From Styela clava (taxonomy: Eukaryota), in NCBI RefSeq assembly GCF_964204865.1, contig NC_135262.1:10106001-10170000 (forward strand): a stretch of DNA of 64,000 nt, read 5' to 3'. The position numbers were made by a program, and so were the translations under genes. Position 1 is the first letter of the stretch, and each line of letters opens with the position of its first letter. This document shows positions 3,507 through 53,361 of this stretch, piece after piece. The notes under the pieces are model-generated. The model was given only the letters and a program-made list of their open reading frames with translations, was not told the DNA's origin and did no database searches.

Positions 3507-6500
3507 CTAACATGCTGCAAAATATATTTTGATTTACAATATATTTGTTCTTCATGTAAATGAATGCTCAAATGGTATGATAAGGCCTAAAATATGACGA
3601 TTGTAAAACAATCGAATGCATATAAATTATAGACAATCAGTGCTGTAAATAAAATTAAAATTGATCTATTCGTTGGTATATACTAAAGTCCTAGAATAGT
3701 TATAGTCAGAATTTAAACTTCTTGTAATCAGAATTGAAGACTTATGAAAGTGATACTTTTTATTTTTAAGAAATAGATTATTTGTAAATCAGATATTGGT
3801 TTTCTGAATAGCATGGAGTCAGAAATCGAACGAAGCTCATATCATTTCAAATAACTAATTATGACGAAATAATAAAAAGATCATTTATATCGATTTACAC
3901 TTACGATATGCACAAGCTGGCCCAACCCAACCTTCATCGCAACTACAAGTTGGAGTGTTACCATCCAATATCACCTGACCATTGACACATTCTGAAAACA
4001 ATACGTTACAGTTATAAACTATTTAAAATATGTGCCAAATTTTATGTTTGTTTGCCTCAACTGTGCCTATACTGTACTTTGCATTTATTTAAATAAGATT
4101 CATTTATATAGTTGCATAGCATCAATATCACTATTGTGTAAACCTGACTATTTTCCAATTAATATTATAAATATAGAAATATAAAAAATAGCTTCTAAAT
4201 AATCACGAAGTTTACTTTATAAATATCTTGAAATAATAATTGAAATCAACCATATTTGAACGTTTTTATTCTCATCGTTTTCTATTGCAAAAAGTATTTG
4301 TTATACTAGAATCGGGGGTGTTTAAAATAAATTTTGTATTGAAAGTGTATGAATTATGAAAATTATTGGACATTATTAATGGTATTTTATTATAGGCTTT
4401 ATCCAATAAAATAACTCGTTTTCGATGAAAAAAACTTACCAAAAACCTTTGGTAGAGAACTACATGCATAATCTGCATAACAACCCATAACATCAATAAG
4501 CTCAGAATCTGCTATTTGACTTCCAGCATCGCTGAATATGAATAAAATACTGTATATCAAAGGTAAGTTCAAAAATTGAGGCATTCGCAATGGAATATAA
4601 TTTAAGTAACTTGAAAACGAATCAAATTTCGTAGATTTGCCTGTTGAAATGATGAGGTCAAAGTATATATTATAAAATTGAGGCTACCCAATTGTACATA
4701 ATAGTTGTGCTGGAGTCTTACTCATCGTTTAAGCCGAAGTATTGGGAACGATTATTTGGTTATCTGTATAATATTTGGATTTGCTAACTTGATAATAGGT
4801 CGATCGCGGTATGACCTGATAAAATATTTAAAAAATTCTCAAGAATTCATAATTAATTTCAATGATGTCAAAACGAAGAAAAACATATATTCTGACCGAG
4901 AGAAAAAACTAATGTTGGGAGTTTATGGTGTTTTTATATTTGGATATTTTTTTCAGTAAACAGAATTTCAACTGATAAAATATTTCATATATACCGATAT
5001 ATCTATACAACAACATACGTGACAACAAGATTATATCCGAAAATCACTCCTGAAATTTCTCCGGTAGTAGAGAATTCACTCGTTACATCACTGCCTACAG
5101 TCCCAGCTACGGTTTGAATATCCAATGATGTGGAGGTTGGAAATTTGGAATACTTAAATAAAGAAATTATATTCCAGTAAACTGACGTGACTGAAGAACT
5201 ACTTTTTATAACAATAATTAGCATAATTGGATACAACACAATAGTTTGTTCAAAGATATTTAATATGCATTGTCGTTGTCCTGGATTAGCTAATTTATGA
5301 ATAAGTACAAATGATTATTCTGATAAAACTGAATATTACTTTATAGTGTCATCCTATTGGAAGGCTTATAATTCAAGTAGAAAATATAAATGAAAATAAA
5401 AGTCCAAAAGTTACAATTCAGGTTACAGGGTTGGGAAAATTTTCAATTTCCATGATCTCTGTGCGATTTCCCTGTAATTTTGTATAACTTGATAATAAAT
5501 TCTAATCGTTTTCAGTCATCTTCAAAGAAATAATATTCGATTATCATGTCATTTTTCTATACTCCATTTTTAATTTTCGTGTTTTTCATTAAATAATTAG
5601 ATACATTTCGAATCATTATTGCAATATATCACATTCAGAATATCACTAAAACGCACGCGGACACAGAGAAAAATATTCGCATACAAACGGCAAATCTTAC
5701 CCCTGCCTGACCCAAAACAAAGAAAATATCTGCCATTGCTGGAGCGTTTGAGTCAGTTGGATTGTATCTCTGAACAATTTGATACCATACACCACATGTT
5801 CCTCTAACTTCATTTCCAGATATTATTCGATCACCAACAAGATTTGCATCTCTGTTTGCGTGAGTTATCTAAAATTATAAAATCAGTTAAAATATATATT
5901 ACTTATCTTTAGAACAAAATTTAATAAAAAATATGAGAAAAAACTAATTTTCAATTTTAATAGTTAAGGTTTATTGTAGTAAATTGTAGTAAAAACATTT
6001 CTACTACTTTTTCTTGTAAAGAAAATAGATTTTATTTCGGGCTGGAATAAATGACAATTTTAAATGCGAATATTTTTTCAACAAAGATAATAATTTTTTT
6101 TGGTTTCTTGTTCTCAACAATAGTATTTGAAAAACTAAATCGAGTCTTCTCAGCGATCGGGTCTTCCAAAAACTGAAGATATAGAGTTTGACTTGATTAC
6201 TTATCGATCTTGATCGGTAAGAATGTTGATAAGTATTTGTCTGTTTGTTTGCTTGTCTGTCTGTTTGTCTGTTAGATACACGCGATATCTCACGAAAGGT
6301 TGAATCTGCTCCAAATTTTTCATGTGCATTCATCATAACTCGGACCAGGAGCCTATTGATTTCGGATGAATTATGTCGTATAATTAGCGAGTTATTAATT
6401 AATCAGTGATGAAGAGATCTAGATTTTTGAAAAACGAGAGAAAGTGTATGACCTAGATTTTTGAGGCGAGAGCACGCATGTGCTGAGTGTGTGTGCGATG

Positions 6501-12500: not shown

Positions 12501-15500
12501 TGGCTCGTTTTATTCTTGCAGTCACGCATACGATACCACTGGCATAAAGGCATATACATCAAGGCATTACCACCGACATATCTCTAACCGACCATTTTTA
12601 TGCAAATGGGAAAAATACTTTACGTGTATATAACGGATGAAGTGACCGAAAATACATAATTACCTGTCCCACTCGTGTCATGACAAGTTGTATGATAATG
12701 ACTGTTTCGTAAGAGGCGTACACTGTTTGTGTTGCCGAGTATTCATAAGTACATTTTCCATCGGTTGTTGTAGCAGTTGCTGGCCCTAAAGTCGTGACTG
12801 TTCCCGTTTCCGCGGGTGATGTGATAGTGGTTTTCATCTAAGAGTGGAAAAAGGTGAATGGGTGGCACAAATTTGACAAACCTATACATTTGTATAGTAA
12901 TGCGATGCAGTAGTTGTAGATCTAATGTGTATAGTGAAAGATTTTTTCTCTCATGTATTGTGTAAAATTAAAAATGTAATATGACACATGTTACATTAAA
13001 ATTAACCTCAATTTGATGAGATTCGAAAAATCGTTAATACATTAAAATATACAAGTAAAATTCGTTGATATGTTATAAAAAAAAATAATTTTGTAGCCAA
13101 GGATATTTCTCTAAATTACAAATGTGCAACAAGAGAAGCGGCAAATATATCCATTATTGCCATGTTCGGCGGTAATAAATTTTTTGTTCACATTCAGTGT
13201 CAAAACACGGAAAGACTGTTTTGTTTTAAATATGCTCTTGCTCACTTACTCTATGGAATGTTTCATCCCTGAGTCTGTCTACATTAGTAAAATAGACCAA
13301 TTGAATGAAAGGCGTTGCTGTAGACTGGTCGTATTCGAGGTCTCGAAAGCTGTAAAACAAACGAAGATTATGTAAGAATTAAAATCTAGTGTTGTTTTAT
13401 TGTTTATGTTCAATAGACACGGGTTTTCAATATCTCTATCTTTTATATCTGTGAGGTATCGTTTATCATGGATGAGCTGATGGGTTATATTTTTGTACTG
13501 TATTTGGATTAATCTCTTCTGGAGACCAACATAAATTGTGTCCAACTATCGCACGTTAACCGTACGTAGTAAGAAAATGCAATGATTCTACTACAAAATT
13601 GATAAAACCCGAAAAACTTTATTCGAATGAACGGATGAGTACAAATATATCTTAGAGACGTCGCCGCCCTGAAGCGCTGCTCAAGTTGCTGGAGCAATAG
13701 TCATTCTTGGACACAAGGTGCATGTACGGATCTTTTTGATAAATTGTTGTTATTTCGTTTGCTTATCCCGCGACCCATCGATTTTATTGCTGATTTACTT
13801 AAAGTTGTAAAGTGTCGATAGGCACTAAAAAGCTATTACCAAATGCTGTAACATTTGGTGCTAAGCCAAAGTCTTACTGTTATGGTGCGACTGGATTTGT
13901 ATTACTGATTCTTCGAATATTTTGAGTGATCAGGTTACAGATTCCATTGTAGCCGGTTGGGTGCAAATGTCCGTCGGCTTAAGTGCATATATATATGTTC
14001 AATTTCCGCAGGTGCAATCGATATGGGATTGCTGAAATCCGTAGGTGCGAATGTGCGTGGGCGCGAGCTTTCCTAATGAAGTCCAACACAATTGAAGAAA
14101 CTGACGGCACAAAATGTCCAATGATACCGATGAATTTAAAATATTTGCCGCCGTTAACAAAACTGTCCATATTTTTCCTGCAACCATGGTTGGCAGAAAT
14201 ACGAAGTCTATCGTTGTTTTAGCACGGTTACTGACAAACTTGTTTGCGCATTCTTAATCAGAAAAGGTTCTATTAGATTTTGACGACATTAATTGCCAAT
14301 ACAATATGCACATAAAATATGACTGCGTTCTATAATATATACAATTATTTGGCACGTGGAATGTGGGCTCTGCAGTAATCGAGTCTATTCTTTTGAATAG
14401 TGAGTACGATTCGGAGACAAGTTGAAAAAATCGCTACCTATATATAAAACAGGGCTAGGATAGGCAGTTTGATCAGGAATTCGGTTTCCATGTAGATCTG
14501 TCCACATTTTCAGGAAATGAGTCACTACTACTCGGATATGAACATTTCTTGTATGACGGAGTCTACACAAACACCTTACAGTGGCTCCATTGCTTGATTC
14601 AGTCGATATGTTAAAAGAGTGTTTTAAGAAGTAGAAAACGGTTTCGAAAAAAATTTCCTTGTGTGCAACCTATGATCCCCCGACTATAATTGACCGTTAG
14701 CGTGGCTTCATTGTACTCATAAAAACAAATCCATATATGCTCATGATTCATTGTAATTCGTCGCCAACATTTGGTGGCTTTTGACAACAGTCAACCAATA
14801 GCCAGGGATGATTTAAATCATCTTTTTATGGTGTTTCGAAATTTCTATAAAGTTATCCTGCCTGTCGGTGTGACGACGGCACTTGTTAAGCTTGCAACGC
14901 CTGGATTCTAGTAGGAGGGACATATTTAATGTTGATGTAGGAACGCATGATAAACAACTTTAAAAGCGTTACACAAAGATGTCTCTCAATTTTGAGATTC
15001 CTGAATGGATAACTGATAGAATAGTTAAAGCAGTTTGGATTATGAACTTCTCGAAAAGAAAGGCAAAAAACTCGCGTTCAGTGCCATGAAAACATTCATA
15101 AAGGGCAAACAATCGTCTTGGCATAGAAAACAAAGATATGATTCATTTCGATGTAACAACCTTCTGTTGTTTTAGAAGCAAATCCTGAGGACGAACAGCA
15201 AACGGGTTCATGGTACATCCGTAGTTACATCACCGTGCAATGTTCTAGAAGTGGCGCAACATCATCCAAGACGTGGTCGGCGTAAACAAAATTATGTCCA
15301 ATATTATGCATCCAGTTAAGATAGGTGTATTTGTATTCCACCCAGTGTCGCTAATAGTATATCTATAGCATATTGCATGCATATCCATTAAACTCGGAGA
15401 AACGGGAGTTTTCGTGTCTCCCAACAATTTAGAAAAACGATCCGTGCGTCCAACCCTGGTCCAATAAAGTCGAAAATATTAGCGCTGGTGCTGTCTTGCT

Positions 15501-18500
15501 GGTACAAATTGATCACGTGTTGAAGTGGTTAAAATATTCTAGAATTTCAGTATCTATCTTTTGTGCACATGCTGGTAGTATTCGCATTTATCTTATGGCG
15601 CAGGAAAGTTTGAGATGTAGTCATTCTTTAATGTCACAATGATTTGAAACGAAGACCCGTTTAGGTTATAGCAATTCGATATAATATATTGCTCGTGGGT
15701 TGCTTGCTAGTGTTTCCGTTTTGGTGATTTCAGCGGAAATGAAAGCAGCATAATCGTATTTTGGTAACGAGAATAGATATTTCCTAGTTGAGAACACGCC
15801 CGCCATGATTCGCGAATTAAAAAACAAAATGCAATATATGTAATTTCCAATTTTGAATTATTTTATTGAAACATTTTGAAATTTCAATTTTTTATTCATT
15901 TTGTGCCCCAATCCAAACCGCTCTCATGGCATGATCTATGTTTGCCATAACGTAGATACGTCACTGGGATTTTCCTATGTGTATATCAATATTCATTTTC
16001 CGCATTTTCCTGAGAGGATTTTATTTATTTTAAATCCCAAATTGAAATCGTCGGTTGCCTATGTTTTAATTTAAGTGATAATTTTAATATCAAACACTCG
16101 AATGCGTATAATTATAAAATCTACAGTCATCTACCTACTAATACACATACGCTGGTTTAATATCAATATTTTTGGCTGTACAGGGTGTCTCAAAAGTAAG
16201 TATACACTTTTAATTTTGATTTGCATTTCAGGTACTCATCATAGAGCGTTCATTTCTTCAGAAAACATAGTATGGATAAGTAGTAAAATTTAGGTATCGT
16301 TTTCATTTTTGTCAACCCGCAGAATAACGAGGAGATTAACCGGCGAAATGAGGTGCAATATTGCTGTTTGGCAAGAAGCATATAAATTAGTAAAGCAAAC
16401 TCAGCACCTCTATAGATAATTTGGAATTAATTCGGCTCCGATTGTTTTCCTACGCGCGTCCGCTCCACGGTCTTCCTAATATTTATGCATCAACTACAGA
16501 TTCGGTTTCTATAAATTTACGATAAATTGCATGAATTGTTCGCTGTGTAGGAGCCGAATTAATTTCAAATTTTTTGGTAAAGAGTTTACCTTACTGATTT
16601 ATATGATTTTTGCCAACCTGCAATTTTGCACCTCGTTTTTGTGTTAATCTCCTAATCATTATGTGGGTTATTGAAAAATGCAAACAATACCTAAATTTTA
16701 CTACTTATGCATACTATGTATCCTGCCTGAATAAAATATATGCTCCATGATGAGGACCTGGAAAGAAAATCAAAATTAAAAGTGTATACATACTTTTGAG
16801 ACTTAACCTGTATTATTCGAATCGTGTTACCCATCTCATTAGTTTGTTTTTAAATGGACTGGAAATAGCTGTACTTTATTTAACAAATTACATTCCCACA
16901 CTTCATCTTTGCAAAGTCTGTCTCCGCTAAACAGCGTTCAGTTTAGAATCCTTTGTCTCAAGTCCAGCAAAAAGGCCTTACACAAAAACAAACAACAGCC
17001 CGTGGCTCCAACTAAAGGCAATGACTGACCGGAATCAATTTTTTGCAATTAGTTTCTTTTCAAGCGTTAAAGGCATGAGTTAAGTCGCTAGATATATGCT
17101 ATTAAAATTTCACAATGTTACATACCTTATGTCCGCATTGAAATCGTTTTGTATCAACAGGAATCTATCAAATCCAAATTCCTAAACATTTGAACATAGT
17201 ATTTCCAGTTAGTATGTGCGGAACTTCAGGGTTTATATAAATATCTCAGTTTCACTATTTTATACTATCACTTTAACTGATCTTAGTGTAAGCATGTCAT
17301 TTTTCTCTGCAGGTCCGCATTTTTTTATTTCCTAGTACAGGAGTGTGCAACACACTGCGCGCCAAACCATTCTTTGTGGCGTTTGCCAACAGTCGGATTT
17401 TTACCCACCAAGCAAAAAATCCTAATCTGTCAATTTATGTTTGCAAAGCTCACTTGGGTTAAAATATATAACTTTTTTTTGCTTTTGTCGTTGCGTTGGA
17501 TCTTTCGTCGTTTTGCCCGGTGCCTTCAATACTCTAAGGCTAAGCAGTCAGCTTTCTAATCCTATTTTGCTAGTCTAGTGAGAATAATATATTTTCCGTG
17601 TACACTGAACATCTAAATCTTTTGTGTGGCCCAGCTAAATTTCTTAAGTTGGTTATATGGCTTACCGACAAAAATGTTGCACACCCCCGCCTAGTAGTTT
17701 CAAAATATGAAGTATACTATGACATTCGGAGCGCATTTCCACATTATTAACATATATGGCTATTCCTGTTTTTGTTATAATTACTATCTGAAATAAAGTA
17801 CAGCATTAAATTATTCCAGCTCAAAAGATTTTGTACAATTTGCAAGCTTTAAATTTATTTCAAAATACATTGTCATGTATATAGACAAATAGTACCGGCA
17901 AAGGGGACTAGCTCCATCAGTCTAGTTTTTGTGAATCAGGTCTCTGCCTGAATATTGGAACTATATTAAACATGAAAACTGTTTGAAGTTTTGTTTCATG
18001 GCTTTCAGTTTTTCGCTAATTTTAAGAGAACAATTTTTTGTACACTATTTAATAACAGACGTTTTAAAGTTCTTACCGTTGATATGATTGAATTTGCGCT
18101 CGTCATAAACGGACTTCCAGTTCCGGTGTTATATGCAAATGAGTTGGTATTTAAAGCATTTATAGCAGTTCTATCGCCTGCATCAATATTCCCCAGTGCA
18201 TCGTCCGGTATATTTCCTGAAAGTAAAGATAAAAAATTACGAATGCTAACTATCCTTCATTTAAGGGCATTACATGGCTATGTTTATTCACAAATCTCAA
18301 AGAGAATCGAAAATAGTACAATTTTGTGTATAATCAAATTCTGAACAGCTTATGATACTAACCAACGAGATACAAAAGGACTTTCCAGTGAATGCGTAGG
18401 AACAAGGTTTAAGCCGAAACACAGCATTGCAAAAAAAATAGTTAGGCAATGTTTAACATATTATTAACAATTTTAAAAAAGCTACTTTGAAATGATTAAG

Positions 18501-19096
18501 AATAAATTTTAAAAAATACAAACATAAAACGGAAGATTCATATTTATGATATTTTTTGGCACTCCAGAAGTATATGTACCAATATGGAGGTAACTAATTT
18601 TGTTAGCCTATACTTTACATCAATTTCTGTAAATTGACGGAAGCCCATGGGCAGGGGCTATATTCACTTGGCTAACACAAACAGTCCCCGAACTCGTAAT
18701 AGAACAGAAATAAGAAAAATTAGAATAAAATTATGGCCTGATCCTACAACCTGGTACACATACTACGGGAATACCTATTTTTACTATGACTAAATAATGT
18801 AGACTCTTACACCGAAATCCTTGCATAGAATTTGAAATAAGTATTGTGATATAAAACCCAGGGCTGAATGTCGATGGCGAAAAGCGCAGCCTCTAGATTT
18901 ACGAAAGAGATGTGAATAGAATATTAGTTAACATTTTTCATAATTACCTCTTGAATTATTTCTATGCATTTCTTTGTGATTTTCTAATATTGTCAAAACG
19001 TTATGTTTTATATATTTACTTACCGCCACTTTTACACAGGTCAAAGCACAAATACAGCAACACAAGTTTGAGACAGCTGTGAATAACAGTATACAT
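3507..19096 (-). CDS. Uncharacterised secreted protein: signal peptide + two copies of an unknown module + three EGF-like domains (~617 aa; ~647 aa with the alternative last acceptor)
   Basis: Exons with canonical AG/GT and continuous phase: 19096-19024 (MYTVIHSCLKLVLLYLCFDLCKSG, signal-peptide-like), 18216-18077, 17181-17126, 13349-13250, 12837-12664, 11131-11031, 10744-10662, 10340-10242 (EGF CNNG..CRCYPSAFGNTC), 9284-9192 (EGF CYQG..CECAMGYGGVTC), 8962-8811, 8339-8155, 7357-7249, 5868-5701, 5152-5019, 4531-4440, 3991-3905 (EGF CVNG..CSCDEGWVGPAC), 3514-3507 (PC*). No internal stop in the spliced frame. Small extra exons cannot be excluded. Confidence 0.85.
6197..6598 (+). mobile_element. 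HINE-like element, second copy
   Basis: Same 5' sub-terminal inverted repeat, (CTGT/TTGT)n tract and core as 2799-3109. 3' end GATCGGTAAGT...CGGTCTCTGATCG. Confidence 0.75.
11240..12312. mobile_element. Degenerate foldback/MITE with long inverted arms
   Basis: TTTTGTGAAAATGGGGAGGATTTC (~11319) pairs with GAAATCCACCCCATTTTCACAAAA (~12199). CAGCGTAAAAC pairs with GTTTTACGCTG. The right end is GCACAGTG; the left end is eroded. Confidence 0.5.
13480..15170 (+). mobile_element. Fossil hAT transposase, Buster group (ZBED5/ZBED8/SCAND3/FAM200-like), in intron 3 of the EGF gene
   Basis: Collinear frameshifted motifs: EKLYSNERM (~13610), SIGTKKLLPNAV (~13815), STIRRQVEKIA (~14403), QEFGFHVDLSTFSGNESLLLGY (~14473; cf. 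FSLQLDESTLPGNESLLLAY), CATYDPPTIIDR*RGFI...IHC/IRRQHLVA (~14660-14780; cf. CATDGAPAMVGRYRGFI...HCVIHRQHLVA), FEIPEWITD (~14990), AFSAMKTFIKGK/NRL (~15075). Confidence 0.82.
16181..16810. mobile_element. Tc1/mariner-type MITE with long (~260 bp) inverted arms
   Basis: TA|CAGGGTGTCTCAAAAGTAAGTATACACTTTTAATTTTGATTT ... AAATCAAAATTAAAAGTGTATACATACTTTTGAGACTTAACCTG|TA. The arms pair inward to TTAATTCGGCTCC / GGAGCCGAATTAA. TA target-site duplication. Confidence 0.88.
17338..17689. mobile_element. hAT-type MITE
   Basis: Terminal inverted repeats CAGGAGTGTGCAACA / TGTTGCACACCCCCG. Flanked by a CCTAGTA direct repeat (17331-17337, 17690-17696). Confidence 0.75.
18558..18776 (+). mobile_element. Short interspersed MITE-like family (GGCACTCCAGAAGTA...TACTACGGGAATACC)
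   Basis: Imperfect ~24-bp terminal inverted repeats. Further copies at 19557-19764 (inverted), ~21770-21933, ~24872-25035, ~11716-11815 and ~42365-42442. Confidence 0.75.
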
Positions 19097-20861: not shown

Positions 20862-23800
20862 ATATGTATAAACTGCTTTCTTTACCGCTATGTTGAGTTG
20901 CTACAACGCCGCAAGCTTCACTATTTATATTTTTTTCGCTAGAAGGCTTTTACGTTTATTTATTTCTAAAATCTTTGTAGGTTCTGAGGGATTCGATTTT
21001 TGTGTGATGTTGTCTCTTGTGACAGATTGGATACAAATACTACTGAGTTTTGGCCTCCTTGTTCGTCAATATATTTGAACATCGCTCTCTTGTTTCATTC
21101 CATATATATGGTATTGCTTATAGGTGGGTATGTTTTCCCGGTAATATATCGTGGAATGATATTCGGAATCGGATGGGAATCGAATACTTGTAAGTAGTCA
21201 TATTTAGCATCCTTATTTGTGACCACGAGTTTAAACTTATTGGGACTTTTCCCCGAGTCTTGTCTCAAGCTCATTGGTCTTTTCTGTAACCGAGTTGGTT
21301 ATCCGTATTCTTGAACTCCGCAAAATCTGAAATTTTAATTGGTGTTCTTACAAGCAATTCATGATATACAAAATGTTCCGCTGACCGAAAATCACTACCT
21401 TAGAGAGCTGTCACAATATTTCACAGTGTATTTGAAAACATTTGCAAATCAGTCGTCTTTTTGGGAAGAAAAATATATATTAAAGATTTACCTGCTATTT
21501 TGATAAATTCATGTTTTTAACTGTTGAATGAAACGTGAATTATTTATCAGAAATTTTAACCCACCTTCACATTCTCGGCTTTCATTAGAAAACGAAAGTA
21601 ATCGTTTTTAAGGAGCTTGAAATTTTGAGAGAGTACGACTGAGCAAAAATTTTCCAGAGCAAATGCATTGCAATGCTCCTTCAAATTTACACAGTTGATC
21701 ATGCTGGCAATTCTTTGCGTTGATACGAATGATTCAGGTCCCAAATCATTGGCAAGAAAGACAGCAATTCCATTTTACATCAAGTTATCTAAAGAGACTG
21801 AAATCTATGGGCAAGGGGATATATTCACTTGGCTAACACTGACAGCCCCCGAGCCTGCAATAGAACAAGAAAAAGGAAAATAAGAATAAAATATAGCCTG
21901 ATCCCAACGTGGTACCCATACTTCGGCACTACCGTCTTGCCTCTGTAGCGCCCAGATATGAAGCTTATTATTGGTTTCGCTGTTCTCGGGTGGAATCAGA
22001 AAATCTTACAAATAATATATATCAGCAAAATGCAGAAATTCATTCTCAATATAAAATCTCGTTTGCAGCTCAATCCGAAAAAAAAATTGGGTACTTCTGA
22101 AGTATGCATGGCAAGATGGCGGACAGCGGAACGTAGTGTGTCGTGGAATCGATATTCGAAATCGGATAAGAATCGAATACTTGTAAGTAGTCATACTTAG
22201 CATCCTTATTTGTGACCACGAATTTAAACTTATTGGGATTTTTCCCCGAGTCTTGTCTCAAGCTCATTGTTCTTTTCTGTAACCGAGATAGTTATTAATC
22301 GGATCCTTGAGCTCCGCAAAATCTAAAATTTCAATTGGTGTTCTTACAAGCAATTCATGATATACAAAATGTTCCGCTGACCGAAAATTACTACCTTACA
22401 GAGCTATCAAGACGTTTTCGAACTTACCAGCAGTAAGAGTGACCAATATATTCACAGAACGATATAAAGACGATAAAATCAAGGAAAAGTTTATGAAAAA
22501 TATTATTCCAATTGCATAGTTCGCTATTTGTCTCGAAATGAAATATTTTACTTGTAACACATTTTGAATTCGAAAAAACGGAAATAGGTTTTTATTTCAA
22601 TGTTTTGTCAATTTTTTATAGTAAAAGAATTTGTATAAAACAATGTATTCACTAAAACGTGATATAAGTGCAACGTACCAAACAGCCCAAATAAAACTTA
22701 AACAATGGGGTATTGGATATCATTCAAACTAGTAAAAACAAAACATAGGACTCACATTCTGGATCATGATAATTTTAGGCCTGATTTTATTCAATTGCAC
22801 AGAATTGCTGAAATTGAACTAAAATACAATTCTAGATTGGCCAATACCAAGTAGCAATCATGAAAATACTGTAAGTATATTATTAAATGGTTTTAAATTA
22901 TATTGATAAATCATACAGGTGTCAGTATTCCTGTAATGTCTTATTTGCACAGCCATTCATTTTCTTGTAAAAATGGAGGTAAATTGCAAAGGTAAGCATG
23001 TTCTGCCTAGAAAATTTTCGCTTAATATTTTTTGACGACGATCGTTGTATTGAAGCATAAGGATTTTGTTACTTTTCAGATATCCAGTTTTCAACATAGT
23101 AAAACTGGAACAATCACGACAATTAGTCATTTTTAGTCTTCTGAAATTTCCCCTTTTCATATAGCAGGTGTGTGGATTCGCTGCTTTTTGCAACTTTTTA
23201 ACGTATACGATATTATCAGTGGGAAAACGCCACCCAATAGAAACATTCCGCTGAGCAAAAACGAATATGTGTAAACTTGATATACATCGTACATATATCC
23301 TCCTATTAAAGGTCCTATGACACTGCCCAGTCCATTTCCAACTTCGAGATATCCAAAAGCAACAGTGAGTAGACCATCCCCAAACTGGTCAGCAACCACG
23401 ACTGGATAAATTGACCAATGTCCAAAAGCTGCTCCAACTAGACCACAGTAAACAGCATTCCATTCAAATGATGTTGCAAGAGGACTTAGGATAGTGAGTA
23501 CACCGGATGCAATTCTCAACGCTATAAATAAAGTTGGAGTATGTACACACTTAAATGCTGCAACGAAACCCCATAGAAAACGCCCCATCAGATTTGACAG
23601 TCCCATGATGGATACTAGAATCGCACCTGAAATGTAAAATAATTAAAAAATTGGTAGAACTATCACTAGACGAAACTATTTGGCATTTTGTAGTGTCAGT
23701 TTAACATATAATCTTACAAGTAAGTCTGTTGAATGCAATAATACGGTCGATAAACCAAAATGAAGAACCAATTAGAAATTTGGAAAATTCATTTTCGATT

Positions 23801-26800
23801 ATGGATTTCGATTCGTTATCTGAAATATAATATTTTTGTTTAAAGATTTATTTATCTTCCAATTTTATCTATAGATATCCTCGAATTTTTTATTTCTAAT
23901 CGCCATGAAAATTCACTCGTTTCAATCATTCAAATTTGTTTGGGGAATATTCTTCTGATACAGATATGTATAAACTGCTTTCTTTACCGCTATGTTGAGT
24001 TGCTACAACGCCGCAAGCTTCACTATTTATATTTTTTTCGCTAGAAGGCTTTTACGTTTATTTATTTCTAAAATCTTTGTAGGTTCCGAGGGGTTCGATT
24101 TTTGTGTGATGTTGTCTCTTGTGACAGATTGGATACAAATACTACTGAGTTTTGGCCTCCTTGTTCGTCAATATATTTGAACATCGCTCTCTTGTTTCAT
24201 TCCATATATATGGTATTGCTTATAGGTGGGTATGTTTTCCCGGTAATATATCGTGGAATGATATTCGTAATCGGATGGGAATCGAATACTTGTAAGTAGT
24301 CATATTTAGCATCCTTATTTGTGACCACGAGTTTAAACTTATTGGGACTTTTCCCCGAGTCTTGTCTCAAGCTCATTGGTCTTTTCTGTAACCGAGTTGG
24401 TTATCCGTATTCTTGAACTCCGCAAAATCTGAAATTTTAATTGGTGTTCTTACAAGCAATTCATGATATACAAAATGTTCCGCTGACCGAAAATCACTAC
24501 CTTAGAGAGCTGTCACAATATTTCACAGTGTATTTGAAAACATTTGCAAATCAGTCGTCTTTTTGGGAAGAAAAATATATATTAAAGATTTACCTGCTAT
24601 TTTGATAAATTCATGTTTTTAACTGTTGAATGAAACGTGAATTATTTATCAGAAATTTTAACCCACCTTCACATTCTCGGCTTTCATTAGAAAACGAAAG
24701 TAATCGTTTTTAAGGAGCTTGAAATTTTGAGAGAGTACGACTGAGCAAAAATTTTCCAGAGCAAATGCATTGCAATGCTCCTTCAAATTTACACAGTTGA
24801 TCATGCTGGCAATTATTTGCGTTGATACGAATGATTCAGGTCCCAAATCATTGGCAAGAAAGACAGCAATTCCATTTTACATCAAGTTATCTAAAGAGAC
24901 TGAAATCTATGGGCAAGGGGATATATTCACTTGGCTAACACTGACAGCCCCCGAGCCTGCAATAGAACAAGAATAAGGAAAATAAGAATAAAATATAGCC
25001 TGATCCTAACGTGGTACCCATACTTCGGCACTACCGTCTTGCCTCTGTAGCGTCCAGATATGAAGCTTATTATTGGTTTCGCTGTTCTCGGGTGGAATCA
25101 GAAAATCTTACAAATAATATATATCAGCAAAATGCAGAAATTCATTCTCAATATAAAATCTCGTTTGCAGCTCAATCCGAAAAAAAAATTGGGTACTTCT
25201 GAAGTATGCATGGCAAGATGGCGGACAGCGGAACGTAGTGTGTCGTGGAATCGATATTCGAAATCGGATAAGAATCGAATACTTGTAAGTAGTCATACTT
25301 AGCATCCTTATTTGTGACCACGAATTTAAACTTATTGGGATTTTTCCCCGAGTCTTGTCTCAAGCTCATTGTTCTTTTCTGTAACCGAGATAGTTATTAA
25401 TCGGATCCTTGAGCTCCGCAAAATCTAAAATTTCAATTGGTGTTCTTACAAGCAATTCATGATATACAAAATGTTCCGCTGACCGAAAATTACTACCTTA
25501 CAGAGCTATCAAGACGTTTTCGAACTTACCAGCAGTAAGAGTGACCAATATATTCACAGAACGATATAAAGACGATAAAATCAAGGAAAAGTTTATGAAA
25601 AATATTATTCCAATTGCATAGTTCGCTATTTGTCTCGAAATGAAATATTTTACTTGTAACACATTTTGAATTCGAAAAAACGGAAATAGGTTTTTATTTC
25701 AATGTTTTGTCAATTTTTTATAGTAAAAGAATTTGTATAAAACAATGTATTCACTAAAACGTGATATAAGTGCAACGTACCAAACAGCCCAAATAAAACT
25801 TAAACAATGGGGTATTGGATATCATTCAAACTAGTAAAAACAAAACATAGGACTCACATTCTGGATCATGATAATTTTAGGCCTGATTTTATTCAATTGC
25901 ACAGAATTGCTGAAATTGAACTAAAATACAATTCTAGATTGGCCAATACCAAGTAGCAATCATGAAAATACTGTAAGTATATTATTAAATGGTTTTAAAT
26001 TATATTGATAAATCATACAGGTGTCAGTATTCCTGTAATGTCTTATTTGCACAGCCATTCATTTTCTTGTAAAAATGGAGGTAAATTGCAAAGGTAAGCA
26101 TGTTCTGCCTAGAAAATTTTCGCTTAATATTTTTTGACGACGATCGTTGTATTGAAGCATAAGGATTTTGTTACTTTTCAGATATCCAGTTTACAACATA
26201 GTAAAACTGGAACAATCACGACAATTAGTCATTTTTAGTCTTCTGAAATTTCCCCTTTTCATATAGCAGGTGTGTGGATTCGCTGCTTTTTGCAACTTTT
26301 TAACGTATACGATATTATCAATGGGAAAACGCCACCCAATAGAAACATTCCGCTGAGCAAAAACGAATATGTGTAAACTTGATATACATCGTACATATAT
26401 CCTCCTATTAAAGGTCCTATGACACTGCCCAGTCCATTTCCAACTTCGAGATATCCAAAAGCAACAGTGAGTAGACCATCCCCAAACTGGTCAGCAACCA
26501 CGACTGGATAAATTGACCAATGTCCAAAAGCTGCTCCAACTAGACCACAGTAAACAGCATTCCATTCAAATGATGTTGCAAGAGGACTTAGGATAGTGAG
26601 TACACCGGATGCAATTCTCAACGCTATAAATAAAGTTGGAGTATGTACACACTTAAATGCTGCAACGAAACCCCATAGAAAACGCCCCATCAGATTTGAC
26701 AGTCCCATGATGGATACTAGAATCGCACCTGAAATGTAAAATAATTAAAAAATTGGTAGAACTATCACTAGACGAAACTATTTGGCATTTTGTAGTGTCA

Positions 26801-27065: not shown

Positions 27066-30000
27066 ATTGAAGCATTAAAATGATTATGATTCAGAGTATC
27101 TTCAGATTTCAGTCACCTCGGAAATACTGATTCTTCTTACGGGAATTGTGATAACCATTTTAGCAAATCTCATGACAAACATAACGCACAACGGAAACAT
27201 TAATTTAAGGCATTTCCCGTCATGCAGAGTTACACAAGATTACTCAATATCATTCAATTTACGCAAGATCTATAGACTATTAAAAAAAAAACATACGCTA
27301 AAGATTTCATTACCATGTTTTAATTTTTTTTTAGTCACGTGTAAGAGTCGAAATATTTGTGGAAAAAAATCATGCAGAATTAAACATTATTACAACATAA
27401 TGTTATACACTTGGATTAGGCGCTCAAATATAGATATGTCAACGTTTTAATGAATCATCCTCTATTTGGTAGCCATATCTCATGGTGTACAATATTCAGT
27501 GGTGGGATTCAGCCGGTTCGCACCGGTTCTATAGAACCGTCTCACGGAATTTTATGAGATCAGCGAACCGGTTAGCATTACATGACTTTTTGTAACAGAA
27601 CCGCCTGAAAATATGACATCTGTATGATGGAACCGGCTGACAAAAAAATTGAATCCCACCACTGACAATATTGAACTATAATTCATTTTTACTCAATAAA
27701 AATCAAATTGTATAAAAAGATACAAAAGTATTTCAATCAGACCAAACAAAAACGTCATAATGGTGGTTAACCTAAGTTATTTAAATTATAGCAAAGCATT
27801 ACGAAAAATTCTTATACGTTATCTAATCACAGCTGTAAACCAAGTCCAAATAACGTACCTTGTTTAATTGTCATGTTCAAATCGTAATAGGCACGGAGTG
27901 GAGTTAAACCAAAGACAATCATCATGCCACAGAATACAGTTACATTGTTTATAAGCAAAATATAAATATTAGGATTTTTCAACAACATTTTTGTTTGCTT
28001 TAGATAATTTGCTTCCTTTTTGATGTCGATTGTTGGTTCTAAAAGTGCAGATATTTCAACACCCTGCAAGAGAATAACATTTATATGGTTAGTCTCCAAT
28101 TTTTTAATATTTTAACTATGAAGTTACATTCGCCCAACAGCAAGCCTCGTTTAAATATTTAGAAGAGGAAAATAATGGAACAAAACTTCAATTGCTTCCA
28201 CTTCAGTTCTATCGACTCAGAAAACTTGGAGCTGAATTTTTTACACATTGCTGTTTACAAAGTTAATTTGTAACAATAATATAATTGCCTTCAATGCTAT
28301 AATCACTACTTAGACATTTGATTGGTTGATCTATAAGAAACCGCGTATTAGAAAACGACGCACTAAACTAATCACAAGTTCAACCGAGAAGATATTTATT
28401 ATAAAAAGCATTGTAAACACCGGTGCGGTGTGTCGGACAAAACCACTGTTTTCAAACTATAATTAAGTCATGGTGTATCTGATCAAAAACTTAATCTTTC
28501 ATTGCCACATTCTGGTTTCTACATTTCATAATTTTCGAGTTATTTTATACATTTTTATTATTCCCTAGTGAAGCAGTGATATTGTTTTGAATTTGAAAGA
28601 TCATTGAATATATTTGCGGCAAATTAATGTATTTTGGATTAAATAAACAATAAAAAAGGAGTAGCACCTAAGTTGACAGCTAAACGACGAAAATTAATTG
28701 TGGCCCATAACTGTAGGATTGATGACCCGAAACTCAGTCATCCGTCCTAAACTTCGGAAGTAAGGGCTGAATTTTTTAACCAGAACTAAGAAACTTGTAA
28801 ATTTTCGTTGTCGAAAGATCGTTTATCTCATAATTGAATAGCGTTATTAAAGTCGGATTCATTGAACCAATAGTCGGAATCTAAATTTTTATCAGCACAG
28901 AGTTGAAGTCAGCAATTGATTCGCACTCTTAAACAGAAGACTCATTATACAAGCATTTCATCTCTGCGTGTAATATAAGATCAGCAGCATGACATCATCA
29001 TTTAACTACAATCCTTACCTGACTCTCTTCTGGAATAGTTTCAGGAATCGATACCTTGAATACCTCATCGCTTGATTCGATATTTTCAGCTTGAACTTCT
29101 TCTGACGTAGTCTGGGAACTTAGAGCGAAAGATGACTTCCTCCGGGTCAACGGATTTGTGAGCCAAGCTCGCATTATTTGAAAACTATTTTTTCGCTGAA
29201 ATTTTGGCTGATTATCTTTCACATCTATTGCAGACATTTCAGAACTTTTGGTCTCTAATGTTTTATCACTTTTTAGTAAATTGGCATTCTGGTCACACTT
29301 AACTTCAACTTCGACACTTGAAGAACTTTCTGTCTTGTTCTTTTTGAAGCAAGAGAACAATGTAAAATTTGGTGCTTTATCGACAGGACACATAATGAGT
29401 CCGAATACTATCATATTAGCGTTTATACCCCCAACTAGCAGAATAGCGCCTCTCCACCCATACAATTCCATAAGATACTCGAAAACAACAGGAAAAACGA
29501 ACGATCCAAAACCAATTCCACTTGCTACAACTCCCACAGCAATTGAGCGTTTTTCCTTGAAGAATTCGCTAATGGTTATAATGGCTGGGATATAGCACAA
29601 ACCCCCTCCTATACCTAAAAACAAGAGAAAAATCAAATTTTGTTGACTAAAGCATATTTGTTGTCTATGAGTTATCGCTTCCGTGAAATCGCTGTTTTTA
29701 ATTTTCATCTCGATCAGAACGACAGCTTATACTTTGAGAGCAAGAGTTTTGCGCAAAAATTTTAAGTGTTAGCAGCTGGTAAATTGCATAGATGTTCTGG
29801 GTTGATAATTAAGATAGGTTTAAGGACTAGGCAAATGGTTACGGTAAGCTTTTAAAGTTGGATTTGTGCAAAAGGACCTATTGATACTCTTTGGCAATTA
29901 GGAAAGTTACACAGTAATATCCAGACTCACCTGCACATACAGAATATAACAAAAATATCAACCACATGGATGTTGCAAAAAAGCATCCTATTAGTGCTAA

Positions 30001-42774: not shown

Positions 42775-45077
42775 TTAGTTTGCATTTTTCTCTTTGTTTG
42801 CAGCCACAATTCCATCGAACATTTTTCTAAACTTTGCCACAGAATCTCCATAACAAAAAGCAACGGCGGGTATTTCTTCCATTTTCTTTTTCCATTCTAG
42901 AAGGCGTGGATATTTGTCAAAATTTAGCTCAGCAAGAAGATATTCGATACCAGCAACGACAGCAAATGCGGAATAATCTAAACAATATTACCATATTGTA
43001 AAATGCTATCAACGATTTCCTGCAATTCATTTAACAGTCTCAATTTGAATTAAAATTTTTGTGATGTTTTTCAATCAATATTTGTATCATGTTATGCAAG
43101 AATTAAAAATTACCATTATAATACCTCATTCGAAAGTTTTGACTCAAAACGAATCATAATTGAGGATATTATAACAAAATAAATTATTAATGTGAGCGCA
43201 CGATAATTATATAAAATTGTATTAGTTGAAGTTTTGTGTTGACTATGATATTGGCTGATTTCGAAATGAACCGAGTTTAAAATGGTGACAAAAATAGATG
43301 AAAACTAACGAGCTTAACAACCAAACGATCTGCTAGTGGGAAACAATTATATGGCATGTCTTCTATTTCTTTCAATACATGAGAACAATTATGCATAAAA
43401 TTTTGTGTATGAACCGAATTCTGATAGCGATTCGGATTTGTGCTCTCATTGAAGTACGTAAATCCGATTTTTGGACAATCCTGAAACGCTTCCGTTTTTA
43501 TTTCCCCAAGAGTGCCATTTCATATTTTGTCATTTCAAAGTTATAAAAAAAATTAAATCAAAGTTGCGCACTTTATTTTGGTCCTGGAAATAAAATATTT
43601 AATGAAAATTAATGGTGCTGGAAATAGCCATTTTACCTGCAACGGTAATATAATCTGACACCATATATTCTTGTTGTGTAAGTCTTCTTTCTAAACGAAT
43701 ATAGATGTCTTCTATCGCAGGCCATCGTCCAGGAATTGGACCCGTTTCTCCACGAAAAAGAACTCCAACGATATTCTGAAACAGAAAGGGAACATTGAAT
43801 TCACAGCAAATATGAATCGCTTTTAGCATAACTACATCCCTACTCTAGTGTAGGGCTACTCAACTATTTTTATCGAAGGTCCGCAAACAAAACTTCAAAA
43901 TTATTTGGGTCCGGTCTTTCCAGAAATGATATTCCGGCGTCCTTAAACGAGCACTTCCTCGACCGACTGATGATTAGTAGTAAATTAAAATTGTTTATTA
44001 TGGTGTTATAGTTCTTTTGGTATATATTCAAACTATAAAAGTCATTTTATATTAGGAAATTCAAATAGTGGGGCTAATGATCCAAAATAAATAATTAGGT
44101 GCGGTCCAAATCCAATACTCGAAAGGTCCGGATTCGGACCGCGGTCCGCCAGTTGAGTAGCCCTGCTCTAGTGTATCTTATGTCCACACATAATTGGTGT
44201 TTGGGAACAGTGGATTGAATAGGTGGAAATAATATAAACACATAATGATCATTTTTAGGTAATTACTGAATGTCTAATAAAAAGAAAAGCGTGTAATATC
44301 AATAACTTACGAAATATTCCAAAATATTTGTGAAGAACTGGAAATCTTGGAAGAGCAATTCGTTGACTTTGAACTGTGCGTTCAATTCTGTCGGATATAG
44401 TTTCTTTTCTTCGTCATTTTTCTCATATTTTGAGCAGAGATAGCAAATGATAGCCCGACTGTAAAAATACCCGTACAAGTTTAACAATAATAACCTTGAT
44501 TTGAAACAAGAAATTGAAAAATTTCAAATTTCTGCTATAGTTTTTGCAAAAGGTTTAATTTGTCTGAAACATGCTTTTCTTTGTGTAAACTTTTGTAGAT
44601 CCGCCCGGAATAAGAACAAATGTACATGCAAATGAGATCGAATCCTTTCAGTTCAGACCAGTTACGAATTTACGATCGAATTGACTAACAATAATTCCTA
44701 TCGTAAAATGTTAACACAGTAATACTAAGGCTTTCAAACAACTTCATATAATAACAGAGAACAAAGTAATATCTATCCATTAGTTATTAAATATTAATCC
44801 CTGCAATAAATAACAAACACATTTCTCGTAAAACTTTGGTTAATTACTAAATATATAAATATATAGAAATTTACCTTTCTCCTAGCCCAAAATTCCCATC
44901 AACAATATACGGTACTTTGCCTTCAGGGTTGATTGCTAAATATTCTGGACTTTTTTGATCCTTTTTTCCTAAAAGATCAATGTATTTCTTTTCGTATGGG
45001 ATTGCAAGGGCTTCTAACACCGACCAAACAACTTTAGCCGGCGGGCTTAGGGGATGCCAATAAAACGTCAATACCAT
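42775..45077 (-). CDS. Glutathione S-transferase, Ser-type theta/delta-like class, copy A (230 aa)
   Basis: Exons 45077-44875, 44458-44311, 43775-43637, 42977-42775. Motifs WHPLSPPAK (catalytic Ser), INPEGKVPYIVDG, GESRAIICYL, ITVADYS, KYPRLLEW. Frame is open. Confidence 0.92.
43851..44165. mobile_element. hAT-type MITE in GST-A intron 2
   Basis: Terminal inverted repeats TAGGGCTACTCAACT / AGTTGAGTAGCCCTG. 8-bp TSD CTCTAGTG. A single empty site (CTCGAGTG) is present in copy B at ~50928. Confidence 0.93.
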
Positions 45078-45139
45078 TTTGAATCGAGTCGCTGAAGCGT
45101 GCAGTTTTGTTCTTGATGATTTGTGACCAGTCTGAGGAA

Positions 45140-45240
45140 ACCGAGTTGGTTTTATATACAATACGGACAACTACGTCATTCTCTTAATGACGCCATAGTA
45201 TGACGGTCCTTGTCGCAATCGTTATTCAATGACATAACGA
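45140..45240 (-). promoter_or_regulatory. GST core promoter (TATA box plus clustered TGAC(G) half-sites); copies at ~51965-52065 and ~57070-57170
   Basis: TATATAAAA ~75 nt upstream of the ATG. Inverted repeat CGTCATT-N5-AATGACG conserved in all three copies. Confidence 0.6.
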
Positions 45241-51902: not shown

Positions 51903-53112
51903 TTTGAATCGAGTCGCTGAAGCGTGCAGTTTTGTTTGTGAGAATTTGTGACCAGTCTGAAGAAACCGAGTCGGTTTTATATACAATACGGACAAAGACG
52001 TCATTCTCTTAATGACGCCATAGTATGATGGTCCTTGTCGCAATCGTTATTCAATGACATAACGAATCGCGTAATATTATTTTAGTGGGGAATACCAGAT
52101 TTTTTTACAACATCGATGTCGAATACTTCGACGAGCAAATCCATCCCATGTTAATTTACTTTATATTTCGCTGCAATGTCGCAATAGAAAATCTACAGCC
52201 GCGTGTGTAAGCACAGAAGTCTGAAGATTGAATAATGTTATTCAAATAACAATTTTGTGTTTAAAAACTATTGAAATATATATAAGCGTATATTTCACTA
52301 GAGAATATACTTATAATTGGTTTCGTGTTAAAATAATTCCTCATATCAGGTCACGTGATCTCAAATCTGGGTCAAAATTTTGCACCGGGTCATTCTAGTT
52401 TAATAATAGAGTGTCGTTGTCGCGAGGAAAACAATCGTCAGAAATTACATGATTGTAATCGTTCCTCTTTTCAACATCGTAAAACAATCAAAAAGTGGCA
52501 GTGGAGAGCAAAATTGCAGAAGCAAGCACTTAGTTCTTTCAAATAACTTCATTCTAATTTTCCCCTTAACCATCCCTTCTAACATTGGCATTCAGAGGTC
52601 TATATACATCATTATTAAATGAATCCTTAAAGGAGGCGAAAGATCAGTAATCCTCTATTAGAGTGAAAAAAAAAAAGTGAGGGAAATTATAAAAGCCAAG
52701 ATTTCATTTCGGAAAAATTTCGCTACACAAGATATTTATATGATGTGATTTTCAAATTCACTGACATAAATGTATTCCTGAACGTTTCGTCTGACCCGGG
52801 TCAGACTTGTTCAGACAAGCATGCCTCGCAAAAATTTGTATGCACTTAAATAATAGTTATCAAGTTGGTGGTTAGTTCTCAGTAGAGTATTCAAAGTATG
52901 GACACTTAAAGAACAAAAGGAAAGGTAAATGCCAATCAATGAAGTGGACCTTTGAGTGGGGAACAATTAAAAAAAAGGATTAAAACAATTACACGGTATT
53001 CTCCTACCACAGTATATGTTAAATTCGTGCTGGGTTCGAGGCTACATCGTTGGAAAACTGTTGATCAATCATAATTGAACTTTGAAATCATATATAACTT
53101 CCAAACTAATAA

Positions 53113-53361
53113 AAGAAAATATCGATCGGAGACCGAAGACTTATCGATCGAAACTGCGAAACTAAATATACGACATAGTTCATTCAAAATCAATAGGCTT
53201 CTGGCCCGAGATATGATGAATGCACATGCAAATTTGGAGCAGATTCAACCACGCTTTCGTGAGATATCGCGTGCATCTAACAGACAGACAGACAAACATA
53301 CAGACAGAAAAACAGACAAATACATATCAACATACTTACCGATCTAAAGATCGATAAGTAA
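53113..53361 (-). mobile_element. HINE-like element, reverse orientation, specific to GST unit B
   Basis: (ACAG)n tract, GATCGATAAGTAA end and ATCGGAGACCGA hairpin remnant. Unit C has an empty A-rich site at ~58195-58218 with no clear TSD. Confidence 0.78.

What the first reader, a model, noticed from the sequence alone, without database searches (positions are those of the whole stretch)
3507..19096. Hidden 17-exon secreted protein built from a duplicated, unrecognised module capped by 4-Cys EGF exons
Seen in sequence: after the signal-peptide exon, the intron-phase series 1-0, 0-2, 2-0, 0-0, 0-2, 2-1 followed by EGF (1-1) occurs twice (18216-10662 then two EGFs; 8962-4440 then one EGF). The two halves share sparse motifs: DGKCTYEY / RGTCGVWY, GSPRYVLFGSILFMKDQG / GEISGVIFGYNLVVTDAG, and LIYADEF / GCYADYA. 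This defines an old, internally duplicated module of ~220-280 aa that I cannot assign to a known family. The ORF track shows only fragments of it. Inference: a lineage-specific extracellular protein family (matrix/tunic, immune or recognition role) with a possibly undescribed domain. This is the best candidate for a new system in the window.
Basis: partly seen in the sequence, partly recalled or inferred. Interest (0 to 1): 0.8.

Follow-up and report, generated by a model that had tools for sequence, protein, structure and literature searches.

The report
Sea-squirt secreted protein with duplicated orphan module
This is a real, expressed and already catalogued (but unnamed) sea-squirt gene for a secreted protein made of two anciently duplicated modules of unknown type separated by short EGF-like units. 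So far it is a species-restricted curiosity with no known function.

Summary
A 17-exon minus-strand gene runs from 19096 to 3507 and gives a 576-aa protein. The six-exon phase series 1-0, 0-2, 2-0, 0-0, 0-2, 2-1, followed by a phase 1-1 EGF-like exon, occurs twice. RNA contigs from two studies show eight GT..AG junctions of the second half.

The gene is not hidden. Its product is identical to the Styela clava RefSeq protein "uncharacterized protein LOC120332927".

- **Family:** five full copies in two clusters, plus fragments. No relative outside S. clava turned up, neither in an exhaustive HMMER search with the best-conserved exon nor in the word searches.
- **Module identity:** the ~220-240-aa modules match nothing in Pfam or among PDB sequences. 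AlphaFold models are poor, and fold searches stay within noise.
- **Duplication:** it is supported by intron phases and relative positions (null about 1e-6) and by matching predicted secondary structure. Sequence does not support it; only the last exon pair is marginal.
- **Protein properties:** acidic, no second hydrophobic segment, and no N-glycosylation sequon (6.4 expected).

Function is unknown. The most likely role is an extracellular binding or matrix protein. Interest is modest.

The parts
19024..19096 (-). Exon 1: start codon and signal-peptide-like hydrophobic N-terminus (MYTVIHSCLKLVLLYLCFDLCKSG), ends in phase 1
   Evidence: Donor GTAAGT; exact in RefSeq protein P0019 residues 1-24; the only 19-aa hydrophobic window in the protein
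18077..18216 (-). Module A exon 1 (phase 1-0)
17126..17181 (-). Module A exon 2 (phase 0-2), 56 nt
   Evidence: Found through conservation with the contig-4 paralogues; sequence read
13250..13349 (-). Module A exon 3 (phase 2-0)
   Evidence: Conserved with the contig-4 paralogues
12664..12837 (-). Module A exon 4 (phase 0-0); holds the single invariant Cys of module A
11031..11131 (-). Module A exon 5 (phase 0-2)
10662..10744 (-). Module A exon 6 (phase 2-1), predicted C-terminal helix
10242..10340 (-). EGF-like exon 1 (phase 1-1), four Cys
9192..9284 (-). EGF-like exon 2 (phase 1-1), four Cys
   Evidence: RNA junction 9192|8962
8811..8962 (-). Module B exon 1 (phase 1-0)
   Evidence: RNA junctions at both ends
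8155..8216 (-). Module B exon 2 (phase 0-2), 62 nt
   Evidence: RNA junctions at both ends
7249..7357 (-). Module B exon 3 (phase 2-0)
   Evidence: RNA junctions at both ends
5701..5868 (-). Module B exon 4 (phase 0-0), the best-conserved exon of the family
   Evidence: RNA junctions; paralogue conservation
5019..5152 (-). Module B exon 5 (phase 0-2)
   Evidence: RNA junctions
4440..4531 (-). Module B exon 6 (phase 2-1), predicted long C-terminal helix with two Cys
   Evidence: RNA junctions
3905..3991 (-). EGF-like exon 3 (phase 1-1), four Cys
   Evidence: RNA junctions; best EGF scores but still below Pfam cut-offs
3507..3514 (-). Last coding exon: completes Pro, adds a terminal Cys, then stop TAG (3509-3507)
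   Evidence: RNA junction 3905|3514; sequence
3068..3506 (-). 3' untranslated region, at least this long
   Evidence: A 493-nt RNA contig of run X1 continues 382 nt to the left of position 3450 (table 8, record 1); inferred extent

Best explanation
The locus is the Styela clava gene LOC120332927. It is a transcribed and correctly spliced 17-exon gene for a 576-aa acidic protein with the layout signal peptide, module A (218 aa, 6 exons), EGF-like, EGF-like, module B (239 aa, 6 exons), EGF-like, Pro-Cys. The two modules arose by an old tandem duplication of a seven-exon cassette (a six-exon module plus a phase 1-1 EGF exon). Their sequences have since diverged beyond recognition, but their intron positions, intron phases and predicted secondary-structure order are retained. 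Each module is predicted, at low confidence, to have short N-terminal helices, an antiparallel sheet of about seven strands and a long C-terminal helix. It belongs to no family recognisable by sequence. The EGF-like units are reduced forms that keep the C2-C4 and C5-C6 cysteines and lack the C1-C3 pair. The gene is one of five intact paralogues (three in tandem on this contig, two on contig 4), all with the same 16 intron positions, evolving under moderate purifying selection. Inferred, not shown: the protein enters the secretory pathway and is released, since it has no membrane anchor. It is kept free of N-glycans by selection. It probably acts outside the cell as a binding or matrix component in which the EGF units are rigid spacers and the two orphan modules are the working surfaces. 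The module-A Cys and the C-terminal Cys are available for one further intra- or intermolecular disulfide.
For: - **Gene model:** canonical sites and an intact frame. Eight junctions appear in spliced contigs of four runs from two studies. The model is identical to RefSeq protein P0019 and P0019 maps back exactly to it.
- **The window copy itself is transcribed:** pieces with 0 differences lie at 5701-5818, 8811-8938 and 9192-9276.
- **Duplication, intron evidence:** identical inner phases 0, 2, 0, 0, 2. Relative intron positions are .214/.212.300/.298.453/.450.719/.685 and .873/.872. Exon-length correlation is r = 0.95 and the null probability is about 1e-6 or less.
- **Duplication, family evidence:** the same 17-exon pattern holds in paralogues P0013 and P0017 despite dS > 1.
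- **Duplication, structure and sequence:** predicted secondary structure agrees in the intron-anchored register, Q3 0.67 against a maximum of 0.55 in 220 circular shifts. The A6/B6 sequence signal has z 3.3.
- **Orphan status:** Pfam finds only sub-threshold EGF, exon by exon and on full-length proteins. PDB sequence search finds only EGF and noise. An exhaustive HMMER search of 1.84 billion representatives with the B4 profile finds only S. clava proteins, apart from spurious repeat proteins. Word searches find only S. clava. The own genome holds only these copies.
- **Selection:** dN/dS is 0.41-0.54 between the tandem copies and 0.34 to the contig-4 copy.
- **Secretory features:** a single N-terminal hydrophobic window, pI 4.3, and 0 N-x-S/T sequons against 6.4 expected (P about 0.0004). 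The diverged paralogue also has 0 (P about 0.005).
Against: - No significant sequence similarity between the halves.
- The structure models are weak: full length pLDDT 29.6; module B alone 47.4 with pTM 0.56 and only a 60-77 core. The fold description and the secondary-structure comparison therefore rest on low-confidence predictions.
- The signal peptide was judged by eye and by hydropathy only.
- Part of the RNA contigs laid on the window carry paralogue-type letters, so some junction support is family-level.
- The first-half junctions were not seen in reads here. They rest on the RefSeq model and on paralogue conservation.
- No data on tissue, stage, localisation or binding partner, so the functional part is inference.
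- Only one 56-aa exon profile received the exhaustive cross-species search.
Confidence: 0.72

Rival explanations
1. The modules are fast-evolving members of an already known extracellular domain superfamily (for example a concanavalin/laminin-G-like sandwich, a Mog1/PsbP- or profilin-like alpha-beta sandwich, or a lipocalin or START-like sheet-plus-helix domain). They would be unrecognisable only because the family is small and divergent. The protein would then be an ordinary mosaic matrix protein of the 'globular domain - EGF - globular domain' kind.
Confidence: 0.4
2. The two halves are unrelated modules, and the shared phase series is a coincidence or a consequence of exon shuffling of different domains.
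For: No significant sequence similarity between the halves. Five of six cognate exon pairs are indistinguishable from shuffles.
Against: Five inner introns match in phase and in relative position to within 0.003 (one within 0.034), with joint null about 1e-6. Secondary-structure order matches better than all 220 shifts. A6/B6 has z 3.3. Both modules are followed by the same reduced EGF type.
Confidence: 0.04
3. The window copy is a decaying or redundant duplicate without a function of its own, and the RNA signal comes from its near-identical neighbours.
For: Three tandem copies 82-86% identical plus a truncated copy 7 kb away. Some contigs laid here carry paralogue P2 letters. dN/dS of the EGF exons is near 1 between the tandem copies.
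Against: The frame is intact over 17 exons with all splice sites canonical. RNA pieces match the window with 0 differences where the paralogues differ. Overall dN/dS is 0.41-0.54. Sequon avoidance is maintained.
Confidence: 0.06

Closest known systems
Matrilins (vWA - EGF(s) - vWA secreted matrix adaptors)
   Same: Signal peptide and two ~200-aa globular modules separated by EGF-like units on phase 1-1 exons. Extracellular, with cysteines available for oligomerisation.
   Different: No vWA signal in Pfam at E up to 10. No D-x-S-x-S motif in the sequence. Predicted secondary structure is an antiparallel sheet rather than alternating beta-alpha. No coiled-coil tail.
Laminin-G - EGF - laminin-G cassettes (neurexin, agrin, Crumbs type)
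   Same: Alternation of a ~200-aa beta-rich module with single EGF units. The duplicated cassette has the same logic.
   Different: No Laminin_G or ConA-like hit by sequence and none above noise by structure. The modules are predicted to carry N- and C-terminal helices.
Hemps of Herdmania (stolidobranch-specific secreted EGF-like protein controlling metamorphosis; described in PMC3760835)
   Same: Secreted ascidian protein combining EGF-like repeats with novel non-EGF parts. No orthologue in Ciona according to that paper, so a precedent for lineage-restricted EGF mosaics in this ascidian order.
   Different: [quoted passage not shown] The modules here are large and cysteine-poor (1 and 4 Cys). 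No sequence comparison could be made here, and Hemps did not appear in the B4-profile search.
Canonical six-cysteine EGF-like domain (Pfam PF00008 clan)
   Same: The C-x-C-x2-G-aromatic-x-G-x2-C end motif, a phase 1-1 exon and a length of about 30 aa.
   Different: Only four Cys; the C1-C3 pair is missing. All Pfam EGF-type scores are below the gathering cut-offs.

Membership tests
EGF-like domain (Pfam EGF clan) | Six conserved cysteines (C1-C3, C2-C4, C5-C6) | tested here: not met
   Each EGF exon has four Cys, C-x13/14-C-x-C-x8-C. The positions correspond to C2, C4, C5 and C6.
EGF-like domain (Pfam EGF clan) | Score at or above Pfam's gathering cut-off | tested here: not met
   The best result is the EGF3 exon: EGF 20.4 against a cut-off of 21.5, and EGF_Teneurin 22.4 against 24.3. 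Full-length scores are lower.
EGF-like domain (Pfam EGF clan) | C-terminal sub-domain motif C-x-C-x2-G-[FYW]-x-G-x2-C and a symmetric phase 1-1 exon | tested here: met
   CSCDEGWVGPAC and CECAMGYGGVTC fit the motif; CRCYPSAFGNTC fits approximately. All three exons are phase 1-1.
von Willebrand A domain | Pfam VWA-type profile match; MIDAS D-x-S-x-S; alternating beta-alpha pattern | tested here: not met
   No VWA family at E up to 10 in five family members. No D-x-S-x-S in P0019. The predicted sheet is made of hairpins (low confidence).
   None listed at E up to 10, exon-wise or full-length. This is a sequence-level test only; the structure-level test was inconclusive because the models are poor.
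Internal tandem duplication (module A homologous to module B) | Same number, phase and relative position of introns | tested here: met
   Phases 0, 2, 0, 0, 2 in both halves. Relative positions agree within 0.003 (one within 0.034). Null about 1e-6. Conserved in paralogues.
Internal tandem duplication (module A homologous to module B) | Significant sequence or profile similarity | tested here: inconclusive
   hhalign E 0.066 in the wrong register. Pairwise z is at most 2.8. The sum of cognate exon scores exceeds all but 12 of 2000 shuffles, driven by A6/B6 alone.
Internal tandem duplication (module A homologous to module B) | Same order of secondary-structure elements | tested here: met
   Q3 0.67 in the intron-anchored register against a maximum of 0.55 in 220 circular shifts. 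The basis is a low-confidence model.
Secreted soluble protein | Cleavable N-terminal signal peptide, no membrane anchor | tested here: inconclusive
   The only hydrophobic 19-aa window is at the N-terminus. The paralogue has a textbook-like signal. Sequon avoidance implies exposure to the ER glycosylation machinery. No signal-peptide predictor or experiment was available.

The most novel reading that the evidence does not exclude
The ~220-240-aa module is a new extracellular fold confined to styelid or stolidobranch ascidians. The small, tandemly expanding, fast-evolving and strictly N-glycan-free family built from it would serve a lineage-specific recognition or assembly task, for example tunic or egg-coat assembly, or self/non-self or settlement signalling.
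Probability: 0.2. Interest if true: 0.55.

Novelty: new variant of a known kind. Interest (0 to 1): 0.3.

Why it matters
If the module proves to be a new fold, it would add a domain to the catalogue of chordate extracellular proteins. It would also give a clean example of an internal duplication that is traceable only through intron positions. The complete avoidance of N-glycosylation sites in a 60-kDa Asn/Ser/Thr-rich secreted protein is an unusual, testable constraint that hints at tight packing or assembly. As it stands, this is one more uncharacterised, species-restricted secreted protein family in a tunicate. It is useful for annotation and modest in wider importance.

Tried and rejected
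- **Alternative last exon rejected:** a 3642-3590 exon that would give a C-terminal membrane segment is ruled out by the RNA junction 3905|3514.
- **First guesses for A2 and A3 rejected:** the guesses at about 15470 and about 14450 gave way to 17181-17126 and 13349-13250, found through conservation with the contig-4 paralogues.
- **Unexplained block:** a 74-nt stretch at 16808-16881, 96% identical between tandem copies, is not an exon of the RefSeq product and remains unexplained.
- **Word-based protein searches:** the B4 exon found nothing. The full-length protein and the family alignment found only S. clava.
- **Big HMMER search:** its non-Styela hits are RCC1, HYR_4C or Ig-like and LRR repeat proteins that score by summing many weak repeats. 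I rejected them as spurious.
- **Protein atlas:** For P0002 it gave a poor model and no feature hit.
- **AlphaFold2:** full length pLDDT 29.6; module B alone 47.4.
- **Fold searches:** Foldseek and VIA-align stayed within noise.
- **Exon-wise and module-wise hhalign of A against B:** not significant.
- **Other scans:** Rfam and tRNA scans of the window were empty.
- **Paper searches:** nothing by LOC or XP identifiers.
- I never joined exons into a sequence for any search or fold. Exons were searched one by one, and full-length work used the database proteins that those searches returned (P0019, P0013, P0002/P0017). The mapping script only checks that a database protein can be read exon by exon from the DNA, and it prints coordinates only.
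Full report
**What is there**

The window is AT-rich animal DNA, about 33-37% GC. It is contig 17, positions 10106001-10170000, of a 377-Mb assembly. Names attached to the proteins found later identify the species as the ascidian Styela clava.

On the minus strand between 19096 and 3507, stop-to-stop frames and splice-site reading give 17 exons. All have AG acceptors and GT donors. Together they make 1731 nt, a 576-codon frame plus stop. Exact coordinates are listed under 'parts'.

After the first exon, which ends in phase 1, six exons of phases 1-0, 0-2, 2-0, 0-0, 0-2, 2-1 are followed by phase 1-1 EGF-like exons. Then the same six-phase series comes again, followed by one more EGF-like exon. 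A final 8-nt coding exon adds Pro-Cys and the stop.

**Is the gene real?**

Four runs from two studies hold spliced contigs with eight junctions of the second half. Each lies at the predicted base and each has CT..AC ends on the plus strand, which is GT..AG on the gene's strand.

Some of those contigs carry the letters of the neighbouring paralogue, so part of that support is family-level. Other pieces match the window without any difference at places where the paralogues differ: 5701-5818, 8811-8938 and 9192-9276. The window copy itself is therefore transcribed.

The first-half junctions were not seen in reads here. Independent support came from the protein databases:

- An exhaustive profile search with the best-conserved exon returned two S. 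clava proteins.
- A follow-up word search returned P0019, RefSeq 'uncharacterized protein LOC120332927', 576 aa.
- P0019 contains all 16 in-frame exon translations exactly and in order.
- P0019 maps back onto the window as exactly my 17 exons.

So the gene is not hidden. It is annotated but unnamed.

**The joined step**

Exons were searched singly. Full-length analyses used the database proteins that those searches returned.

**The family**

Own-genome searches with single exons find three tandem copies on contig 17, the window gene and two more 25-56 kb to the left. They also find:

- a truncated copy holding B5, B6 and EGF3, about 7 kb left of the window, annotated as LOC144431374
- two intact copies on contig 4
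- one fragment on contig 4 with an in-frame stop.

The tandem copies are 82-86% identical in protein, and the contig-4 type is 42% identical. RefSeq proteins of a tandem copy (P0013) and of a contig-4 copy (P0017) map to 17 exons with the same phases throughout.

dN/dS is 0.41-0.54 among the tandem copies and 0.34 to the contig-4 copy. Module B is more constrained than module A, and the EGF exons are the least constrained among the recent copies.

**Is the module a known domain?**

- **Pfam:** it reports nothing for any module exon and nothing for five full or partial family proteins, even at E up to 10, apart from EGF-type families below their cut-offs and one GalBD_like hit at E 0.17.
- **PDB sequences:** a family profile finds only betacellulin's EGF (E 0.02) and crustacyanins (E 0.04-0.09) on a 57-residue stretch.
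- **Exhaustive HMMER search:** the search of 1.84 billion representatives with the B4 profile finds, beyond the two S. clava clusters, only repeat proteins (RCC1, HYR_4C or Ig-like, LRR). These score by adding many weak repeats, and I regard them as spurious.
- **Structure prediction:** the family gives only five alignable sequences. The full-length model has pLDDT 29.6. Module B alone has pLDDT 47.4 and pTM 0.56, with a core of 60-77. The atlas's own model of a paralogue is equally poor.
- **Predicted shape:** the module-B model shows short N-terminal helices, about seven antiparallel strands and an 18-residue C-terminal helix.

The module is therefore unassigned. I cannot say that the fold is new.

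**Are the halves duplicates?**

Sequence does not show it. Profile-profile comparison gives E 0.066 in a non-cognate register. Pairwise z-scores range from -2.0 to 2.8. In an exon-wise profile test only the last pair, A6/B6, stands out (z 3.3, 15 of 2000 shuffles), and the sum over cognate pairs exceeds all but 12 of 2000 shuffles. In exon 4 both halves and both subfamilies share an invariant C-x3-Y-x3-Q...G in one register, which is marginal at 109 of 3000.

The gene structure is strong evidence:

| Measure | Module A | Module B |
|---|---|---|
| Inner intron phases | 0, 2, 0, 0, 2 | 0, 2, 0, 0, 2 |
| Relative intron positions | .214, .300, .453, .719, .873 | .212, .298, .450, .685, .872 |

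Exon lengths correlate at r = 0.95. The joint probability under randomly placed introns is about 1e-6 or less.

The predicted secondary-structure strings of the two halves also agree in the intron-anchored register. Q3 is 0.67, with 56 residues in the same helix or strand state. In 220 circular shifts the maxima are 0.55 and 39. This comparison uses a low-confidence model.

I conclude that a seven-exon cassette, module plus EGF, was duplicated long ago. This happened before the split of the two subfamilies, which already differ by dS > 1.

**Protein properties and likely mode of action**

- The mature protein is acidic (pI about 4.3) and poor in Lys (1.6%).
- It has no hydrophobic segment other than the N-terminus.
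- The cysteine count of the mature protein is even. Each EGF-like unit has four, module B four, module A one, and the C-terminus one.
- It has no N-x-S/T sequon although it has 36 Asn and 102 Ser+Thr. Shuffles expect 6.4, with P(0) about 0.0004. The diverged paralogue also has none (P about 0.005). The reversed-motif control occurs 5-6 times.

Such avoidance only makes sense for a protein that meets the ER glycosylation machinery. That supports secretion and suggests that N-glycans would disturb its function. The EGF-like units keep the cysteines that correspond to C2-C4 and C5-C6 and have lost the C1-C3 pair.

My best reading is a secreted protein in which reduced EGF units space two orphan binding modules. 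It would act in the extracellular matrix or in a recognition step. Everything beyond 'secreted mosaic protein' is inference.

**Comparison with known systems**

The layout recalls matrilins and laminin-G/EGF cassettes, but the defining profiles were tested and not met. Hemps of Herdmania is a precedent for a stolidobranch-restricted secreted EGF mosaic (PMC3760835), but it has a different composition. No paper mentions these loci or accessions.

**Verdict**

The gene model, the duplication, the restricted range and the unassigned module hold. 'Hidden' does not hold, most of the proposed motifs are chance, and the function remains open. The finding is of modest interest unless the module proves to be a new fold or the family acquires a phenotype.

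Noticed in passing
whole coding sequence, window 19096-3507 (protein P0019) and paralogues P0013, P0017: Complete absence of N-x-S/T glycosylation sequons in the mature proteins despite Asn/Ser/Thr richness. Expected 6.4, 6.4 and 4.7; P(0) 0.0004, 0.0005 and 0.005. The reversed motif occurs 5-6 times.
   Followed up: yes
G000 contig 17: 10098603-10100622, about 7 kb left of the window start: Truncated extra copy (RefSeq LOC144431374, P0021, 128 aa) with exons B5, B6 and EGF3 identical in protein to the window gene, plus a different first exon. Either a recent partial duplication or an assembly duplicate.
   Followed up: partly
window 6037-6633 (intron B3-B4); related stretches near 2874-3122 and 53075-53347: Interspersed repeat with very high RNA-contig depth (up to about 15,000) in all four runs, with many loose ends. 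It is abundant in transcripts. Rfam and the tRNA scan found nothing here.
   Followed up: no
window 16808-16881 (intron A2-A3): A 74-nt block is 96% identical between the window gene and its tandem paralogue, while the flanking intron is 70-79% identical. It is not part of the RefSeq product. It may be a conserved non-coding element or an alternative exon.
   Followed up: no
window 23157-23606 and 26259-26708 (minus strand); also 28998-29708: Two open frames give the identical 149-aa membrane-transporter-like segment 3.1 kb apart, an exact local duplication. A further transporter-like exon lies nearby.
   Followed up: no
window 44871-45170, 51696-52043, 56800-57108 (minus strand): Three near-identical exons that look like the N-terminal domain of a glutathione S-transferase, suggesting a tandem trio of genes (family assignment by eye, not tested).
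   Followed up: no
window 53600-54400 and 58000-60000: GC-rich stretch (47% at 58-60 kb) with strong negative GC and AT skew, and with long Arg/Lys/Gly/Ser-rich open frames on both strands. It looks like a repeat or mobile element.
   Followed up: no
window 5754-5836 and 7273-7294: RNA contigs laid here carry clustered differences. Those in B4 equal the letters of paralogue P2, so they reflect cross-mapping or gene conversion. Those in B3 match neither paralogue and may be an allele.
   Followed up: partly
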